This document shows positions 18,913 to 24,753 of a stretch of 64,000 nucleotides of DNA, piece after piece. Numbering within the stretch: the stretch's first letter is position 1; the number at the start of each line of letters is the position of its first letter. The stretch lies in the IMG/VR virus record IMGVR_UViG_3300046507_000773, positions 1-64,000 of that record, one strand, 5' to 3'. Position numbers and translations under genes: made by a program. Under the pieces are notes generated by a model. The model saw only the letters and a list, made by a program, of their open reading frames with translations, was not told the DNA's origin and did no database searches.

Positions 18913-20583
18913 GTGAACACCGCAACCCAACCTAATCAGTTCCCGCCCAAGCATCCCCAGTTTATTCTGGCCGCTGACAAGTCCTTCTTCGAAGACTTCC
19001 GTTTCGGTCAGAACAAGGACCAGCGCCTGGGCGAAGGCATTACCCGTGTCGAGGCGATCAGCTTCTACCAGGGCATTGCCGGCCACACCGTCCTGCGTCG
19101 CCGCTACGAACTGGACCTGGCCACCACCACCCTGCCGTACCGCCAATACCTGCCGTACGACGTGTTCGGCCGCATGAACCGCCAGTTCAAGCGCGAGTAC
19201 TTCGCCTATCGTCGCACCCCGCAAGCTGGCGAATCGGAACTGCATGGCAAAGTATCGGTCGGCATCGGCGGCCACATCGATGGTCATCGTACCTTCTTCA
19301 GTGAAGTCGGCGCCCTGGACCTGTTCAACACCGTCGCTGGCTCGGCTCTGGCTGAACGCGTGGAAGAACTGAAGGTCTACAAGAAGCAAGGACCGGAAAC
19401 CCTGGAACTGACCGGCGGCGAGAAAGCCCAGCAGCTGGCCATGTGGGCCAAGCCGAACCCGAACGTCAACATCCTGGTCGACAACGGCGACAACGTCGGC
19501 CAGCGCCACTTCGCCATCGTCAACTTCATCAACGTGCCGGAGGAATACGAACTGGACATCGCTGAAGAAGAACTGGAAGCCCTGGGCTTCTTGACTTACG
19601 ATGAACTGACGAGCAAGAACGCCGACGGCTCGGCCAAGTACAACCTCGAAGGCTGGACCAAGATCTGCCTGGAATACTTCGAGAAGGGTGCTTCCGGCAA
19701 GACCGGCGTGCAAGCCGACATGACCGACATCCAGCGCGGCCTGCAAGCCCAGCAACTGTCCTCAGCCACCAAGCAAGACCAGCAAGCGGCAATCGAAGCG
19801 CGTCGCGAACGTGCGGACAAGATCCGTACCGGCAGCTACGATGGTGAAGGCGAAGCCATCGGTCGCGACCAGATCGAGCAGCAAGCCCACGCAATGGGCG
19901 TCGATAGCCATACCGCCCTGACCGACAATCCGAACGTCGGCGAAGATGGTGTCGTGAAACCCTACGTGGATGTCCAGGACGCGGGCGTCGCTACCCGTAC
20001 CGTTCCGGCCAGCAACAACGTACCGGTCGGCGACAATCGCGCTGTGACAGCAGCGCAAGTCATCCAGGGCGACACGGGGGCAACCAAGCAGTTCGAAGAA
20101 GCCGTGAGCACGCCGATTCCGGCAACGGGTGAACTGGGTGCCAATCCGGAAAACCAGCCTGGCGGCGCCGGTTCGCTCACGCTGGAAGGTCACGGTGAAG
20201 AAGTCGATACCGGCCAAGGTCAATCGAACGAACCGCACGGCGGCTGGCTGAATCACCAGCAGGCAGGCCAAGTGGCGGACGCGCTGACGGCAAGCAACAC
20301 CGAAGACTTCAAGGATGGTGTCAACACCTTGCTGCCCTCGACCGGCGACCTGGTGCCCGATCCTGCCCATCAACCGGGTGGTTCGGGTTCCCTGACCCTG
20401 CACAACGAAGACGCTGACAAAGCAACTTCGAACATGCCGGGCCAGATCAACACCGAAGCAAACAAGTCCGACACGCCGCAGACTGGCCTGCCGGTGCAAG
20501 ACCCGCTGGTCGACAATGATCCGAACAAGGAACTGATCACCGATCCTTCGACGATCCCGACGAGCGACAAACCGGCCGAGTAA
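18913..20583 (+). CDS. NUDIX-like phosphoesterase (COG4112-like) with long acidic disordered tail
   Basis: YRQYLPY, YRR...GESELHGKVSVGIGGHID, NVGQRHFAIV. The C-terminal ~250 aa are low complexity. Confidence 0.75.
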   Translation: MNTATQPNQFPPKHPQFILAADKSFFEDFRFGQNKDQRLGEGITRVEAISFYQGIAGHTVLRRRYELDLATTTLPYRQYLPYDVFGRMNRQFKREYFAYRRTPQAGESELHGKVSVGIGGHIDGHRTFFSEVGALDLFNTVAGSALAERVEELKVYKKQGPETLELTGGEKAQQLAMWAKPNPNVNILVDNGDNVGQRHFAIVNFINVPEEYELDIAEEELEALGFLTYDELTSKNADGSAKYNLEGWTKICLEYFEKGASGKTGVQADMTDIQRGLQAQQLSSATKQDQQAAIEARRERADKIRTGSYDGEGEAIGRDQIEQQAHAMGVDSHTALTDNPNVGEDGVVKPYVDVQDAGVATRTVPASNNVPVGDNRAVTAAQVIQGDTGATKQFEEAVSTPIPATGELGANPENQPGGAGSLTLEGHGEEVDTGQGQSNEPHGGWLNHQQAGQVADALTASNTEDFKDGVNTLLPSTGDLVPDPAHQPGGSGSLTLHNEDADKATSNMPGQINTEANKSDTPQTGLPVQDPLVDNDPNKELITDPSTIPTSDKPAE

Positions 20584-21056: not shown

Positions 21057-22400
21057 GTGAGTAATGACAATGTTTTGGGTACCAATAAAAAGCTGGAACT
21101 GTGGCGCAGTCGTTTGATCGATCTGCTGAAAGATGCAGCGGCCGATGACGTGTTTCTGTCGATGTCCACCGTCGCGGAAGGTCAACCCATCACCTATCCG
21201 TTTGACCGCGCCGCAGTTCAGGCGATGAGTGAAGACGGCCAGTGCAGCTACGAATCGATTTCCTTGCTCGATCAGGAACCGGTTGTCATCGACGAGGAAC
21301 GTGCAGTGGTTGCCAATGTTTTCGTGGTGGCCACGGAAATGCAGAAGTTCGAGAACAAAGAGCGCGTACCCCTGGACCGTGAAGAACTGCACGCCAAGCC
21401 GTCGATAAATGTGATGGTGTACTCGACCGGCACCGGTACTGGCGTCGCTTACGTGACCCACCAGATCGCCGAGTTCCTCTCGTACCGCGGCTGGGACGAA
21501 GTGTATCTGCACGCCACCCACACCATCGACGCCGTTCGCACCATGATGAAGAGCGGCAGTGGTCCGTACACCCATCCCCGCAAAGGCGATGATTCGGCAA
21601 CCTGGGACATCCCGATTACGGTCGCGATGGACGAAGGTGCCAAGAACGAGAACCGAGACCTGCACGAAGTCGTGGTGCGTGAAGCAGTACCGGAATGGCT
21701 CAATGACATCATGCCGGGCTCGCATGCTGATGCAGTCCAGCAGGTCAACGGCCGCTTCCAAACCGACGGACACTTCGGCAAGGAAGCGGTGATCTTCAAC
21801 ATGAATCCGGGCGAACCGTTCTTCATCGTCTTGGGTCGTGATCCGCAAGCGCCGTACCTGGTCGAGCAGTGGGCAACTGACCGCCAACAGATCGAACCGG
21901 AAGATCCGAAGATCCTCAATGCACTGAACATCGCTTCCATGATGCGTCAGTACAAAGACGATAATCCGACGATCGGCATGCCCAAGCTGAAGTTCGAGCA
22001 GTACCTGGAAAAAGAACTGATCATTATCCCGAACCGTGAAAAGCCGTACACGGAAGAAGAGATCCTGATCATGGTGCAAGAAGTTTTGCATCGTGCAGTT
22101 CTGTCGGGGGTGAACGTGCACATCCAGCACAACACGGCGATCATCCACCTGGCCGTCGAAAACGCAGTCGAGCAGCAACTGGCAAACGTCAGCAAGCTCT
22201 CGGCCGCAGCTGGCAAGGATGTGCTCATCATCATCTACGAAGAGGACATGCCGGTGAAAGCCTGGGGGAGCCATGACCTTCTGTATTCGCACTTCGGTAA
22301 GGACGTGGCCGACAAGATCACGTACTACCGTCCTGGTGAATACGAGGACATGCGGGCAGCGGATGAACTGATCGTACCGGATGCTCCGGCTACGCATTAA
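21057..22400 (+). CDS. Multidomain hypothetical protein with a degenerate P-loop-like module
   Basis: 447 aa. INVMVYSTGTGTGVAYVTHQIAEFLSYRGW resembles the 57-59 kb family. Also EPFFIVLGRDPQAPYLV. Confidence 0.8.
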   Translation: MSNDNVLGTNKKLELWRSRLIDLLKDAAADDVFLSMSTVAEGQPITYPFDRAAVQAMSEDGQCSYESISLLDQEPVVIDEERAVVANVFVVATEMQKFENKERVPLDREELHAKPSINVMVYSTGTGTGVAYVTHQIAEFLSYRGWDEVYLHATHTIDAVRTMMKSGSGPYTHPRKGDDSATWDIPITVAMDEGAKNENRDLHEVVVREAVPEWLNDIMPGSHADAVQQVNGRFQTDGHFGKEAVIFNMNPGEPFFIVLGRDPQAPYLVEQWATDRQQIEPEDPKILNALNIASMMRQYKDDNPTIGMPKLKFEQYLEKELIIIPNREKPYTEEEILIMVQEVLHRAVLSGVNVHIQHNTAIIHLAVENAVEQQLANVSKLSAAAGKDVLIIIYEEDMPVKAWGSHDLLYSHFGKDVADKITYYRPGEYEDMRAADELIVPDAPATH

Positions 22401-22491
22401 TTTTTCATCGTTGTACCTATTGTTATGTACGAGAATGTCGCTATCCTTCGTCGTTGGAGGTGGTTGCTATCTAGTGCTCCTAATCCAGACC

Positions 22492-22605
22492 TGATCCGTC
22501 TGAAGAGCCGTTAAAGTCGGCAGCGGTTTCCTTAAAGATATCGCTTGGGCTTGGACCCACGAAAGTTGGGGGAGGTACGCCATTACTTCCCCCTTCTAAC
22601 GGACA
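22492..22605 (+). ncRNA. Candidate type I hammerhead ribozyme with expanded stem II
   Basis: Stem I TCCGT/ACGGA; core CTGAAGA (22500-06); G22507-C22560; GAAA (22561-64); stem III with a 10-bp GGGGGAGGTA/TACTTCCCCC helix; CTA cleavage triplet at 22596-98. Confidence 0.7.
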
Positions 22606-22626
22606 TTTTTCTAAAGGAGAATCGAA

Positions 22627-22815
22627 GTGGCCGAAGATGCAAAGAAGGAAAAGAAACTGTTTGAAGGTCGACAGGCTGACACAGTTCAACGCGGCGTGTG
22701 TGCCAACCTGGCAAACATGCGTGCCAAAGATATCGTGATTGCACTCTCCATCGCACGGGAGCACAATCCAGAAGTACAAAAGGCGCTCGACGAAATTTCT
22801 GCAGTCAAGCGCTAA
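22627..22815 (+). CDS. 62-aa hypothetical protein between two structured RNA elements
   Basis: AAAGGAGA RBS, GTG start, normal composition. Confidence 0.75.
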   Translation: MAEDAKKEKKLFEGRQADTVQRGVCANLANMRAKDIVIALSIAREHNPEVQKALDEISAVKR

Positions 22816-22829
22816 CAGTCTTTGAAGTT

Positions 22830-23050
22830 GAGAGTTGAGCCGTACGGGTGCCCTTCCCCGCACTGGAGCCTCTTAATGGAAGAGAGTCTCACTCGTTTTC
22901 TCTAAGGTGCTGGCTTCCTTGCGGCGGTCGCTGGTAACTTGGCCTGAAAGGTCTCCTTTCCCTCCCCCAGGTCCTAGATGAGAAGACGAGTGCCCATGCT
23001 CACGGCCCAACCGTGAGAGAGACAGGGAGGTAACTTGGATAACTCCCACC
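22830..23050 (+). ncRNA. Candidate structured non-coding RNA
   Basis: 13-bp long-range helix 22890-902/22980-92, 7-bp hairpin 22999-23017, GGTAACTTGG twice, no RBS-led ORF, ends at a UUCG hairpin. Confidence 0.55.
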
Positions 23051-23062
23051 TATAACCAATGG

Positions 23063-23092
23063 GTCCCTCGGTCTTCGGATCGAGGGGTCTTT
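23063..23092 (+). terminator. Terminator-like hairpin
   Basis: CCCTCGGTC-TTCG-GATCGAGGG followed by TCTTTATGCCG. Confidence 0.75.
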
Positions 23093-23221
23093 ATGCCGAA
23101 TTTTTTTGTTTGCAGCATAAAAACCCCCACCAGACGGTGGGGGAATATGCCGTACATTTACAAGATGCGTTTTATACCAGGCATCCATATCACTTGGATG
23201 TGGCAAAGGAAAGAACAGCAG

Positions 23222-23707
23222 ATGACTAACACAAAAAACTATCCACCTATGGTGGTGCTCGAACTTGAGCGTACGTTCCCGTGGTTGCTGGACATTGCGG
23301 CAGACTTAGAAGGTCAGTGCACCGTTGATGAGTTGCTCAATCATCTCTTTGAATTTCTGCGAGATGAGATCAACATTACGGATGCTACCAAAATGCTCAG
23401 ACTGGGATATCGTTTCCCAGAGCACGGCGAGAACGAGGAAGAGCAAAAGAAAAAGGATGAAGAGCAGATCAAAACGTTTGTCAACGTACTGCGTGAAATC
23501 AAAGATGCGCTTGTCAGAGCACAAGTCATCACGGCGTTCGAGACGACGCCTTATCGTTTCCACCGAGCTTTTGGTAATGGCTCCATAGTGCTTGTGCGTG
23601 CTGACCTAGCACCACTCAAGGGGAAGCTTATGGAAACGCCACCACGGCCCGTAGAAAGGGTGTGGGAGACTACATTTGGTCGAGATATGGAGTATCGGAT
23701 TGCTTAG
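23222..23707 (+). CDS. Hypothetical protein, dispersed member of the 42.6-43.8 kb paralog family
   Basis: VVLEL...PYRFHRAFGNGSIVLVR. CCATATCACT motif ~30 nt upstream. Confidence 0.75.
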   Translation: MTNTKNYPPMVVLELERTFPWLLDIAADLEGQCTVDELLNHLFEFLRDEINITDATKMLRLGYRFPEHGENEEEQKKKDEEQIKTFVNVLREIKDALVRAQVITAFETTPYRFHRAFGNGSIVLVRADLAPLKGKLMETPPRPVERVWETTFGRDMEYRIA

Positions 23708-23984
23708 GGATGTTGGGGAGTTCCGCGTCCCAGTTACCCAAGAGATGATGGCAATCGGCGGCAAACTTAATGATGCCGTTTGTCACAGTGTAGTGGCAAA
23801 GTGCTGACGGGCGAAGTGCTGGTTCAAACGTCGGCGCATCTACACTACCATTCCAATTCCACATCTGACCGAAGTGGTTGGGACGGTTAATAAAGACTGG
23901 ATGATATCTGTCGCAAGCAGGACACCAGTGGAGCAGCAAATCGTCGCCGACTTGATGCAGCTTACTTGAAAGTGCGCGAATCAT
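23670..23984 (-). CDS. DUF6527-like Cys/His protein
   Basis: CPAC..YH, WNWNG...PTFEP, CHYTVTNG, DCHH. GAGG RBS. 104 aa. Confidence 0.75.
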   Translation of the reverse strand: MIRALSSKLHQVGDDLLLHWCPACDRYHPVFINRPNHFGQMWNWNGSVDAPTFEPALRPSALCHYTVTNGIIKFAADCHHLLGNWDAELPNIPKQSDTPYLDQM

Positions 23985-24056
23985 GGAGTGGCCTCGATGG
24001 AGGTAATACAGCTGTTGGGGATAGAGCACCGATCTCCTTTTAAAAGAATTTTGACG

Positions 24057-24066
24057 ACATATCACG
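24057..24066 (+). promoter_or_regulatory. Early-promoter-like motif ACATATCACG
   Basis: Exact repeat preceded by AAGAATTTT. Confidence 0.7.
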
Positions 24067-24159
24067 ACAGTGTCAAGTAAGTAGTAAAACCCCTGACCAA
24101 TTACAAGAGGGATATATTCCCCCTCCATAGAATTTGAACAAAAAGTTGAAGATTTCTCG

Positions 24160-24753
24160 ATGCCAACAATACTTTCCTTAATGCAAGACGACGCGCGGTT
24201 TGCCATCAGCTACATGCGGATGGTAGCAGCCCTGTCAGTCTTTGCTTTGACGGGTCGCAACCCGCTTGATCAACTTCATGAACTTGTCGCCTACACTGTA
24301 AGAAACGGTGTTCGCGCAGTCCCTTCTCGCATTGATCCGGAGCGTCTTCGGTTTCACTGGGAGAAAGATCCACTTCTTTTTGCCCGTGGTCGTATTCAGA
24401 TCACGGTGTATTACCGCATCACGGATGAGGGACCGGATGCTATCCAGCATGAGGATACACCTTGGCCCGATGTCTACTGCGGCGAGTTCTTCTTAATCGT
24501 CGAGAAGACGCGCGAACACTACGGCATTAAAGCGATTACGTTACAAGACGTAGAGGAATTTGAAATGCCAGTTCCTAATAATCGCTGGAGAATAACGAAC
24601 CATGCTGAATTTGCAGACAGCTGGGAAGAAGCACAGGCAAAGATGCGACATCAAGTCTTAGAGTTGCCTGGAACGAATGTGCCTCGAGAAGAGGCAACAG
24701 AAGCGATATTTGAAACGCTTCGAATGAACCTGCCTAGCAAGCAGCTCTTTTAG
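24160..24753 (+). CDS. Hypothetical protein
   Basis: 197 aa. Confidence 0.7.
   Translation: MPTILSLMQDDARFAISYMRMVAALSVFALTGRNPLDQLHELVAYTVRNGVRAVPSRIDPERLRFHWEKDPLLFARGRIQITVYYRITDEGPDAIQHEDTPWPDVYCGEFFLIVEKTREHYGIKAITLQDVEEFEMPVPNNRWRITNHAEFADSWEEAQAKMRHQVLELPGTNVPREEATEAIFETLRMNLPSKQLF

What the first reader, a model, noticed from the sequence alone, without database searches (positions are those of the whole stretch)
22424..23098. Self-contained RNA-centred unit: ribozyme, 62-aa ORF, structured RNA, terminator
Seen: about 670 nt between an AT-rich gap with TATG (22424-27, the phiKZ late-promoter motif) and a UUCG terminator, of which only 189 nt are clearly coding. This is unusual in a genome that is otherwise densely coding. 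Predicted cleavage after 22598 would leave a 28-nt leader containing the RBS. Known: hammerhead products have 5'-OH ends that resist 5'-monophosphate-dependent decay. Inference: an undescribed system giving a stabilised dual-function RNA, in which the small protein may bind or regulate the 3' RNA as an RNP or toxin-antitoxin-like pair.
Basis: partly seen in the sequence, partly recalled or inferred. Interest (0 to 1): 0.85.

Follow-up and report, generated by a model that had tools for sequence, protein, structure and literature searches.

The report
Ribozyme-led phage RNA with small gene
A giant phage carries a conserved RNA gene that starts with an unusual hammerhead-type self-cutting motif, encodes a 62-residue protein in the middle and ends in a strongly conserved folded RNA domain; that domain belongs to a larger, previously unlisted RNA family found in related uncultured phages.

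Summary
Window 22401-23223 has one real ORF (62 aa, 22627-22815). Its non-coding flanks are more conserved than the ORF or the neighbouring genes.

I recovered nine related loci from metagenomes. All ten share:
- an invariant TATG promoter-like motif
- a hairpin starting at the predicted +1
- a roughly 250-290-nt 3' RNA domain (incomplete on two short contigs)
- where the contig reaches that far, a terminator hairpin

Covariation in the 3' domain is very strong: alifold z = -10, and 23 of 29 modelled pairs change on both sides.

Eight loci also carry a hammerhead-like module. Stem II is not a simple helix. It is a conserved three-hairpin junction, and no Rfam hammerhead model matches. I therefore read it as a probable new hammerhead variant whose catalysis is untested.

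Six relatives have no ORF and instead carry about 500 nt more structured RNA, giving an 0.8-1 kb RNA with no Rfam match. The window's lineage appears to have exchanged that central RNA for a small gene.

Best reading: a ribozyme-trimmed, dual-function RNA of unknown cellular role.

The parts
22416..22430 (+). Promoter-like motif CCTATTGTTATGTAC. TATG is at 22424-22427 and the predicted transcription start is G22427.
   Evidence: TATGTA is invariant at the same position in all ten loci, and the wider motif CCTATTG(T/A)TATGTAC is conserved. In phiKZ, TATG is the late-promoter consensus with G as +1 (PMC4666361). The window encodes a phiKZ-type RNA polymerase subunit homologue. The full 15-mer occurs once in the window. 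Its use as a promoter is inferred.
22427..22477 (+). 5'-terminal leader hairpin, starting at the predicted +1.
   Evidence: In each of the ten loci a hairpin forms within 1-3 nt of the predicted start. The sequences are quite different between loci.
22495..22603 (+). Hammerhead-like module. Helix I 5' strand UCCGU 22495-99. Core CUGAAGA 22500-06. Stem II domain 22507-22560, made of three hairpins plus a closing G...C. GAAA 22561-64. Helix III 22564-97. Cleavage-site base A22598. Predicted cut between 22598 and 22599. Helix I 3' strand ACGGA 22599-22603.
   Evidence: Eight homologous loci keep CUGA(A/U)GAG and CGAAA unchanged. Helix III, helix I and hairpin 1 change by compensatory substitutions. 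The cleavage-site base is A or C, never G. No Rfam hammerhead hit. Catalysis not tested.
22599..22626 (+). 28-nt leader left after the predicted cut. SD site AAAGGAG at 22613-22619, 7 nt before the GTG start.
   Evidence: Read from the sequence. The SD and the GUG start are kept in L003, L021 and L022.
22627..22815 (+). 62-aa ORF, predicted to form three helices.
   Evidence: Homologues at 61-92% identity. Differences against L003 fall 5/2/18 by codon position, with 16 synonymous and 5 non-synonymous codon changes. AlphaFold gives three helices at mean pLDDT 78. No Pfam, PHROG or PDB relative.
22809..23053 (+). Conserved 3' RNA domain. A closing helix starts inside the last ORF codons. Invariant elements: GUUGAGCC (22834-41) with GGAGCC; loop UUGCGGC (22919-25); SD-complementary UCCUUUC (22954-60); a hairpin with loop CCCAA; and hairpin 23025-23047 with the 13-nt loop GUAACUUGGAUAA.
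   Evidence: In 8 sequences, 37 of 61 predicted pairs change on both sides. Alifold energy is -54.1 against -15.6 +/- 3.8 in column shuffles, z = -10.1. The covariance model finds one copy per locus at 79-121 bits, including the window. On that alignment, 23 of 29 pairs change on both sides and 0 of 500 shuffles reach the observed values.
23062..23094 (+). Terminator-like hairpin: 10-12 bp stem, UUCG loop, then UCUUUAU.
   Evidence: Partly picked up by the terminator scan. Seven of the eight loci that reach this far align a covarying GC-rich hairpin followed by UUUAU here; L010 did not align at this position.
23091..23152 (+). Downstream boundary. TTATGCC (23091-97) overlaps the terminator's U-tract. 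A second hairpin (23124-43) is followed by another TATGCC (23146-51). These are probably promoters for the next gene, not part of the RNA.
   Evidence: TTATGCC occurs 11 times in the window against 4.4 expected. Nine are on the + strand, mostly in intergenic gaps just after hairpins. In the long-form loci, the start codon of the next gene follows this motif within about 25 nt.

Best explanation
The region is one transcription unit of a phiKZ-like jumbo phage. It is a derived member of a previously unlisted family of large structured phage RNAs.

Proposed steps (shown or inferred as marked):
1. Transcription starts at G22427 of a TATG motif, and may also read through from the upstream gene. The 5' end folds into a hairpin.
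2. A hammerhead-type ribozyme follows, whose stem II is elaborated into a conserved three-hairpin junction. It cuts after A22598. This removes the structured leader and fixes the 5' end whatever the transcript's origin.
3. The 3' product carries a 5'-OH and a 28-nt leader exposing AAAGGAG. It then runs through the 62-aa ORF, a roughly 250-nt conserved multi-helix domain and a terminator hairpin.
4. In most relatives the body after the ribozyme is an 0.75-0.8 kb non-coding RNA. In the window's lineage the central 500 nt or so is replaced by the small gene, while the 3' domain stays under strong structural selection.
5. The RNA is therefore dual-function. It is the mRNA for a small helical protein, and it carries an ancestral RNA module. 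That module probably binds a partner through its invariant loops, one of which (UCCUUUC) is complementary to the phage's SD consensus.

Shown: the anatomy, the conservation, the covariation and the coding status of the ORF.
Inferred: promoter use, self-cleavage, the effect of a 5'-OH end, and the role of the 3' domain.
For: - Ten loci share the same order of parts.
- Hammerhead features are kept in eight loci, with compensatory changes in helices I and III and in hairpin 1. N7 is the only variable core base.
- Covariation of the 3' domain. Covariation of the long form: 65 of 140 predicted pairs change on both sides.
- The covariance model gives one strong hit per locus and none elsewhere.
- The ORF is coding but evolves faster than its RNA flanks. 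Against L021 the ORF is 78% identical, the 3' domain 98% and the leader plus ribozyme 93%.
- The 3' domain shows compensatory changes within the ORF-bearing group itself, for example L022 against the window.
- There is no terminator between the upstream gene's stop (22400) and TATG, so read-through is plausible.
- TATG with G as +1 is the phiKZ late-promoter motif (PMC4666361).
- Hammerheads that flank genes in prophage transcripts are already on record (PMC3088659).
Against: - No Rfam hammerhead model matches, even at E <= 10.
- Stem II is not a simple helix. G10.1 could pair with either of two invariant C residues, and I found no precedent for a branched stem II in what I read.
- Helix I is short, 3-5 bp. 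In the window, helix III has a UU/UU internal loop next to its first two pairs.
- Two long-form relatives (L006, L008) lack the module, so it is dispensable for the RNA family.
- No transcript data exist, so the start site, the cut and the 3' end are all predictions.
- Only ten loci are known, several closely related, and all come from uncultured phages.
- The promoter motif differs from the recurrent intergenic TTATGCC motif in the same window.
Confidence: 0.6

Rival explanations
1. The small protein and the 3' RNA are an obligate pair, either a ribonucleoprotein or a toxin-antitoxin-like module, made together from one stabilised transcript.
For: In all four ORF-bearing loci with DNA, the ORF lies between the same ribozyme module and the same 3' domain. 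On the two further contigs without DNA, the ORF is also flanked by long stretches with no called gene. The last ORF codons overlap the closing helix of the 3' domain.
Against: Six of ten loci carry the RNA without the ORF, and no copy of the protein lies within the 4-6 kb of flank held. So the RNA works without the protein. The protein is near-neutral in charge and has no RNA-binding or toxin family, fold or sequence match. It evolves faster than the RNA, with 15 non-synonymous against 14 synonymous codon changes versus L021. There are no antitoxin-type repeats and no nuclease gene.
Confidence: 0.12
2. The hammerhead-like motif does not cleave. It is a structured 5' element, for example a protein-binding or regulatory fold, that happens to keep hammerhead-like core sequences. 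The RNA keeps its 5' triphosphate hairpin.
For: No Rfam hammerhead hit. Stem II is branched and has invariant loops (UUAAAGU and YUUGGA) that look like recognition sites. Helix I is short. L006 and L008 attach the 5' hairpin directly to the RNA body with no such module.
Against: All 11 core positions, the A15.1-U16.1 pair and a non-G cleavage-site base are kept across eight loci, while the surrounding helices have diverged completely. The only variable core base is N7, the one position the hammerhead consensus leaves free. A chance or purely structural motif would not be expected to reproduce this pattern. Natural hammerheads with one or two stem II pairs are active (PMC3088659).
Confidence: 0.2
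3. This is an ordinary small phage gene with long untranslated regions. The 3' domain serves only as a stabiliser or terminator, or is a decaying relic of an RNA gene that the ORF interrupted.
For: The ORF replaces the central RNA domain present in relatives. That could be read as disruption of the RNA gene by an inserted small gene.
Against: The 3' domain is the best-conserved part of the unit: 98% against L021 while the ORF is 78%. It keeps compensatory changes within the ORF-bearing lineage, and its invariant loops match those of the long forms. About 250 nt of multi-helix structure with invariant single-stranded loops is far more than a terminator needs.
Confidence: 0.08

Closest known systems
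Type I hammerhead ribozymes, including those that flank genes in phage and prophage transcripts (Perreault et al. 2011, PMC3088659)
   Same: Same order of elements: helix I strand, CUGANGA, stem II, GAAA, helix III hairpin, U-H cleavage site, helix I strand. Same core sequence. Same phage setting between genes, where processing of long transcripts into gene-length RNAs has been proposed.
   Different: Stem II is a conserved junction of three hairpins rather than one helix. Helix I is only 3-5 bp. No Rfam hammerhead model scores it. Activity is untested.
Hammerheads in 5' UTRs of fungal and plant RNA viruses that are needed for translation initiation (PMC13725137)
   Same: A type I hammerhead sits directly upstream of an ORF, so that self-cleavage creates the 5' end of the translated RNA.
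   Different: Those cases are eukaryotic and replace cap-dependent initiation. Here there is a bacterial SD-led ORF in a DNA phage, and most family members have no ORF behind the ribozyme.
glmS ribozyme and the GIR1 lariat-capping ribozyme (my own knowledge, not checked here)
   Same: Each is a ribozyme in the 5' region whose cleavage defines the 5' end of an mRNA and so its stability.
   Different: Different ribozyme classes. glmS is ligand-dependent and destabilises its mRNA in Bacillus. GIR1 leaves a lariat cap and lives inside a group I intron.
Dual-function small RNAs that also encode a small protein, such as SgrS/SgrT, RNAIII/hld and SR1/SR1P (my own knowledge)
   Same: One transcript is both an mRNA for a peptide under 70 aa and the carrier of a conserved structured RNA module.
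   Different: Those are host regulators acting by base-pairing, with known targets. Here the RNA module is about 250 nt, descends from an 0.8-1 kb phage RNA, and has no known target.
Large phage-associated structured RNAs GOLLD and ROOL (my own knowledge; both are Rfam families)
   Same: The long forms are 0.8-1 kb, multi-domain, rich in covariation, phage-borne and of unknown function.
   Different: No similarity in sequence or structure at Rfam level. Different phage group (phiKZ-like). A hammerhead-type module sits at the 5' end. No tRNA genes were found in the loci held.

Membership tests
Hammerhead ribozyme | Core C3 U4 G5 A6 N7 G8 A9 | tested here: met
   CUGAAGA at 22500-06. CUGA(A/U)GA in all eight module-bearing loci, varying only at N7.
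Hammerhead ribozyme | G12 A13 A14 followed by the A15.1-U16.1 pair | tested here: met
   GAAA at 22561-64, with A22564 opposite U22597. Invariant in eight loci.
Hammerhead ribozyme | Cleavage-site base H17 is not G | tested here: met
   A, A, A, A, C, C, C, A in the eight loci.
Hammerhead ribozyme | Helix III supported by covariation | tested here: met
   The helix III stem sequences change by compensatory substitutions among the close ORF-bearing loci and are unrelated in the four long-form loci, yet all pair from 15.1/16.1 outward. The window has a UU/UU internal loop after two pairs.
Hammerhead ribozyme | Helix I joining the two flanks of the core | tested here: met
   3-5 contiguous pairs next to the cleavage site, with different sequences: ACGGA/UCCGU, AAAG/CUUU, UGGGU/ACCCA, AAG/CUU. 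Short for a natural hammerhead.
Hammerhead ribozyme | Stem II is a helix closed by G10.1-C11.1 | tested here: inconclusive
   G22507 can pair with C22521 or C22560. Between CUGANGA and GAAA lie three hairpins, two of them with invariant loops, forming a tight junction rather than one helix.
Hammerhead ribozyme | Match to a curated hammerhead covariance model (Rfam) | tested here: not met
   No hit at gathering score or at E <= 10 in the window region or in L005.
Hammerhead ribozyme | Site-specific self-cleavage giving 2',3'-cyclic phosphate and 5'-OH ends | not testable with these tools
   Needs an in-vitro or in-vivo cleavage assay.
Known large structured RNAs (group I/II introns, RNase P, tmRNA, GOLLD, ROOL, OLE and others in Rfam 15) | Match to the family's covariance model, or tRNA/tmRNA detection | tested here: not met
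   No credible Rfam match in the window, L005 or L006. ARAGORN finds nothing. The flanking genes are intact, so this is not an intron.
Toxin-antitoxin pair with an RNA antitoxin (type I or III) | A toxic protein, plus an antisense RNA or repeat-array RNA that neutralises it | tested here: not met
   No repeats. The antisense ORF is not conserved. The protein has no toxin family match. The RNA occurs without the protein in six loci. Toxicity itself was not tested.
Dual-function RNA (coding plus structured functional RNA) | One transcript holding both a translated small ORF and an RNA element that is independently selected | tested here: met
   The ORF is under coding selection. The 3' domain is under structural selection both in ORF-bearing and in ORF-less relatives. 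No promoter-like motif or terminator was seen between the two. That they share one transcript is inferred.

The most novel reading that the evidence does not exclude
The 0.8-1 kb RNA is a new class of large, complex-folded functional RNA of phiKZ-like jumbo phages. It is matured by a new hammerhead architecture with a branched stem II. Its conserved 3' module is an effector, for example one that uses its SD-complementary loop and other invariant loops to engage ribosomes, mRNAs or a host or phage protein. The window's lineage shows the RNA is modular: the central domain can be exchanged for a small protein gene while the ribozyme and the effector module are kept.
Probability: 0.35. Interest if true: 0.85.

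Novelty: new variant of a known kind. Interest (0 to 1): 0.75.

Why it matters
A recent review of nucleus-forming jumbo phages that I searched never uses the word noncoding. My literature searches found nothing linking hammerheads or large structured RNAs to these phages.

If the predictions hold, this locus would give three things:
- A hammerhead whose stem II is a conserved multi-hairpin junction, which would widen the known architecture of the best-studied small ribozyme.
- A new large structured RNA family, with unusually dense covariation for so few sequences.
- A natural example of an RNA gene turning into a dual-function RNA by exchanging an RNA domain for a small ORF.

Each claim can be tested with a short synthetic transcript. 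No cultured phage is needed for the first step.

Tried and rejected
Searches for a known RNA family:
- Rfam at gathering score on the whole window, and at E <= 10 on the region and on L005 and L006. Only terminator-like or noise hits came back.
- ARAGORN found no tRNA or tmRNA.

Searches for more copies:
- blastn of the region and of the long form L006 against GenBank phages gave nothing beyond terminator-like pieces.
- tblastn of the two neighbouring proteins against phages gave no match.
- The closest cultured relative, Burkholderia phage FLC9 (major capsid protein 50% identical), is densely coding around its only weak (28% identity) homologue of a gene from this neighbourhood, and the covariance model finds nothing there.
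- IMG/VR scans with the protein, the protein alignment and two RNA patterns returned only the window's own contig.
- Both JGI metagenome scans were empty.
- The GTDB genome scan gave five hits. None carries any other motif of the domain, so they are chance matches.
- DNA for two further ORF homologues (P0002, P0003) could not be fetched.

Ideas considered and dropped:
- Intron. The flanking genes are complete, and there is no group I or II signature or Rfam hit.
- Read-through extension of the ORF or a broken gene. All six frames are full of stops outside 22627-22815.
- A real antisense 127-aa ORF. It is broken in relatives.
- The middle of the long forms being coding. L006 and L008 differ by 1-2-nt indels, and no frame stays open.
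- The conserved UUAUGCC after the terminator being part of the RNA. It is a recurrent intergenic motif, more likely the next promoter.
- Resemblance of UGGAUAAC...CACCU and UCCUUUC to the 3' end of 16S rRNA. I noted it from memory, did not test it, and do not rely on it.

Methods that fell short:
- A full covariance model of the hammerhead module was not built. MAFFT could not align the 3' halves because hairpin 2 and helix III vary in length. The pair table was computed from anchored coordinates instead.
- Protein fold and sequence searches for the 62-aa product found nothing.
Full report
**Where the window comes from.** The window is part of IMG/VR contig UViG_3300046507_000773, 226.8 kb. 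It encodes a phiKZ-type major head protein and a homologue of the phiKZ-type multisubunit RNA polymerase subunits. The nearest cultured phage is Burkholderia phage FLC9, at only about 50% protein identity. It is therefore an uncultured, divergent phiKZ-like jumbo phage.

**Checking the observation.** The stretch 22401-23223 lies between a 447-aa gene (21057-22400) and the next + strand gene, whose start is probably ATG 23224.
- TATG at 22424-27
- CUGAAGA at 22500-06
- GAAA at 22561-64
- AAAGGAG at 22613-19
- GTG start at 22627 and stop at 22815
- a UUCG-looped hairpin at 23062-89, followed by UCUUUAU

Outside the 62-aa ORF, all six frames are full of stops. The 127-aa antisense ORF is broken in three relatives. 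Rfam finds nothing in the window at gathering score and nothing relevant in the region at E <= 10. There are no tRNA or tmRNA genes. Folding the two flanks on their own gives only z about -2, while the reverse strand of the 3' flank gives z = +0.4. The case therefore had to be made by comparing relatives.

**Finding relatives.** DNA searches of GenBank phages, IMG/VR, JGI metagenomes and GTDB genomes gave nothing useful. Protein searches did.
- The 62-aa product has five homologues at 61-92% identity.
- The upstream 447-aa protein belongs to a small family of 435-893-aa proteins.
- Fetching the contigs gave nine loci with DNA.
- In every locus with enough sequence, an 820-1090-nt stretch with no called gene sits at the same place.

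**Two forms of one RNA gene.** All ten loci begin with TATGTA inside a conserved motif. Each has a hairpin that starts within 1-3 nt of the G of TATG, although the hairpin sequences differ. Every locus that extends far enough carries the same 3' domain, and seven of those eight then have a GC-rich hairpin followed by UUUAU (L010 did not align there).
- The window, L003, L021 and L022 are the ORF form: leader, ribozyme-like module, SD, the 62-aa ORF, 3' domain.
- L005, L006, L008, L010, L012 and L013 are the long form. They have no ORF and no copy of the protein in the flanks held. In its place is about 500 nt more RNA.
- That extra RNA differs between close relatives by 1-2-nt indels and folds with abundant covariation. 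Of 140 predicted pairs, 65 change on both sides in only six sequences.
- The long forms also have no Rfam match.
- The window's unit is therefore a derived version of an older 0.8-1 kb RNA gene, in which the central RNA was exchanged for a small protein gene.

**The 3' domain.**
- With eight sequences, RNAalifold predicts 61 pairs, 37 of which change on both sides.
- The consensus energy is -54.1 kcal/mol, against -15.6 +/- 3.8 for 100 column-shuffled alignments (z = -10.1). There are 41 compensatory pairs, against a mean of 6.7 and a maximum of 17.
- A covariance model of the first 126 positions, built from ten sequences, finds exactly one copy per locus at 79-121 bits. It finds nothing in the rest of the window or in the FLC9 region. 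These hits are the training sequences themselves, so the informative result is that there are no further copies.
- On that alignment, 94.6% of cells pair and 23 of 29 pairs change on both sides. No shuffle out of 500 reaches the observed values, and sliding the partners drops pairing to 34-53%.
- Invariant unpaired elements:
  - GUUGAGCC with GGAGCC, around a 2x2 A/G internal loop
  - the loop UUGCGGC
  - UCCUUUC, which is complementary to the AAGGA-type SD sites of this phage and sits in a hairpin loop in several relatives
  - the loop CCCAA
  - the 13-nt loop GUAAYKUGGAUAA
- The closing helix of the domain starts in the last codons of the ORF (22809-13).

**The ribozyme-like module.** Eight loci (all except L006 and L008) carry it between the 5' hairpin and the RNA body.
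- CUGA(A/U)GAG and CGAAA are invariant. The only variable core base is N7, the position the hammerhead consensus leaves free.
- The A after GAA always faces a U, and that U is followed by A or C, never G.
- Helix III changes by compensatory substitutions among the close ORF-bearing loci and has unrelated sequence in the long-form loci, yet always pairs from that A-U outward.
- The bases after the predicted cut pair with the bases before CUGA over 3-5 bp, with different sequences: ACGGA/UCCGU, AAAG/CUUU, UGGGU/ACCCA, AAG/CUU.

What does not fit a textbook hammerhead is stem II. Between CUGANGA and GAAA lie:
- a 3-4-bp hairpin with the near-invariant loop UUAAAGU; its stem covaries as GCCG, GUCG and GCUG
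- an invariant C
- a hairpin of variable length
- a hairpin with loop YUUGGA
- a second invariant C

This makes a tight multi-helix junction that could stack on a single G10.1-C11.1 pair. Natural hammerheads with one or two stem II pairs are active (PMC3088659), but I found no precedent for a branched stem II. The Rfam models do not score it. A crude descriptor scan finds occasional chance matches at minimal thresholds. The argument therefore rests on conservation at orthologous sites, not on the motif itself. I put the chance that it self-cleaves at roughly two in three.

**The ORF.**
- Against L003, differences fall 5/2/18 by codon position, with 16 synonymous and 5 non-synonymous codon changes.
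- The SD and the GUG start are kept in all four ORF-form loci.
- The product is predicted as three helices at pLDDT 78. It has no Pfam, PHROG, PDB-sequence or PDB-fold relative.
- It evolves faster than the RNA around it. L021 comes from the same metagenome as the window. Against L021, the 3' domain is 98% identical and the leader plus ribozyme 93%, but the ORF is 78% identical, with 15 non-synonymous and 14 synonymous codon changes.
- The RNA parts are thus the most constrained parts of the unit.

**Boundaries.**
- TATG with G as +1 is the phiKZ late-promoter consensus (PMC4666361). Its invariance here, together with the hairpin at +1, makes a start at G22427 likely.
- No terminator separates it from the upstream gene, so read-through transcripts are also possible. 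A ribozyme would give both kinds of transcript the same 5' end.
- At the 3' end, the conserved UUAUGCC after the hairpin is not specific to this RNA. TTATGCC occurs 11 times in the window against 4.4 expected, mostly on the + strand in intergenic gaps just after hairpins.
- In the long-form loci, the start codon of the next gene follows this motif within about 25 nt. I read it as the next promoter, overlapping the terminator's U-tract.
- A second hairpin plus TATGCC follows at 23124-51. On the minus strand, that hairpin looks like a terminator.

**How it most likely works.** See the best explanation. The anatomy and the selection on it are shown. Promoter use, cleavage, the consequences of a 5'-OH end and the role of the 3' domain are inferred. 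It is weakened because the RNA family mostly lacks the protein, and nothing about the protein suggests RNA binding or toxicity.

**Limits.**
- Only ten loci are known, several of them closely related, and all come from metagenomes.
- There are no transcript data and no cultured host.
- The ribozyme pair table was computed from hand-anchored coordinates, not from a statistical model.
- Alignments fitted to a model lean towards that model's structure.

Noticed in passing
window 15115, 17724, 23091, 26714, 42118, 43870, 48631 (+ strand), among others: TTATGCC recurs in + strand intergenic gaps, usually right after a GC-rich hairpin: 11 copies against 4.4 expected. It looks like a combined terminator and TATG-promoter junction used throughout this phage. 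It differs from the TATGTAC of the RNA gene.
   Followed up: partly
window 23670-24206 (-); also L008 8256-8540, L012 4708-4992, L013 8421-8705: A minus-strand gene with a DUF6527/BubE domain (PF20137; PHROG 3362) converges on the + strand gene downstream of the RNA and overlaps its 3' end by about 38 nt. The arrangement is kept in relatives. A minus-strand terminator-like hairpin (23143-23124) lies about 530 nt beyond its stop.
   Followed up: no
window 21057-22400 (+), residues about 240-320: The upstream 447-aa protein shares a roughly 70-residue segment (GEPFF.LGRDPQAP...W) with 547 representative proteins, mostly 60-350 aa. None of the eight short and two full-length family members I scanned has a Pfam family. 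The full-length family (435-893 aa) always sits just upstream of the RNA gene, sometimes with a 106-114-aa gene in between.
   Followed up: partly
L021 1483-1712: L021 is a second variant of the unit from the same metagenome as the window. It has an extra 230 nt or so between the upstream gene and the promoter motif, with no similarity to the window.
   Followed up: no
L006 3095-3174 and L008 6285-6364: Two long-form relatives lack the hammerhead-like module entirely. Their 5' hairpin joins directly to ACUUAACAGUU, so the module behaves as an optional cassette.
   Followed up: partly
window 22954-22960 against 22613-22620: UCUCCUUU in the 3' domain is exactly complementary to the ORF's own SD region, AAAGGAGA (8 bp). 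This could allow cis masking of the ribosome-binding site. However, any SD would match this motif, so the match may mean nothing.
   Followed up: no
window 18913-20583 (+): The N-terminal 250 residues or so of this 556-aa protein match PHROG 8902. Weak tblastn hits include regions annotated as NUDIX hydrolase in other phages. The C-terminal half is low-complexity.
   Followed up: no
window 22480-22863 (-): A 127-aa GTG ORF runs antisense to the ribozyme and the 62-aa ORF. It is open only in the window and is interrupted by stops in L003, L021 and L022.
   Followed up: yes
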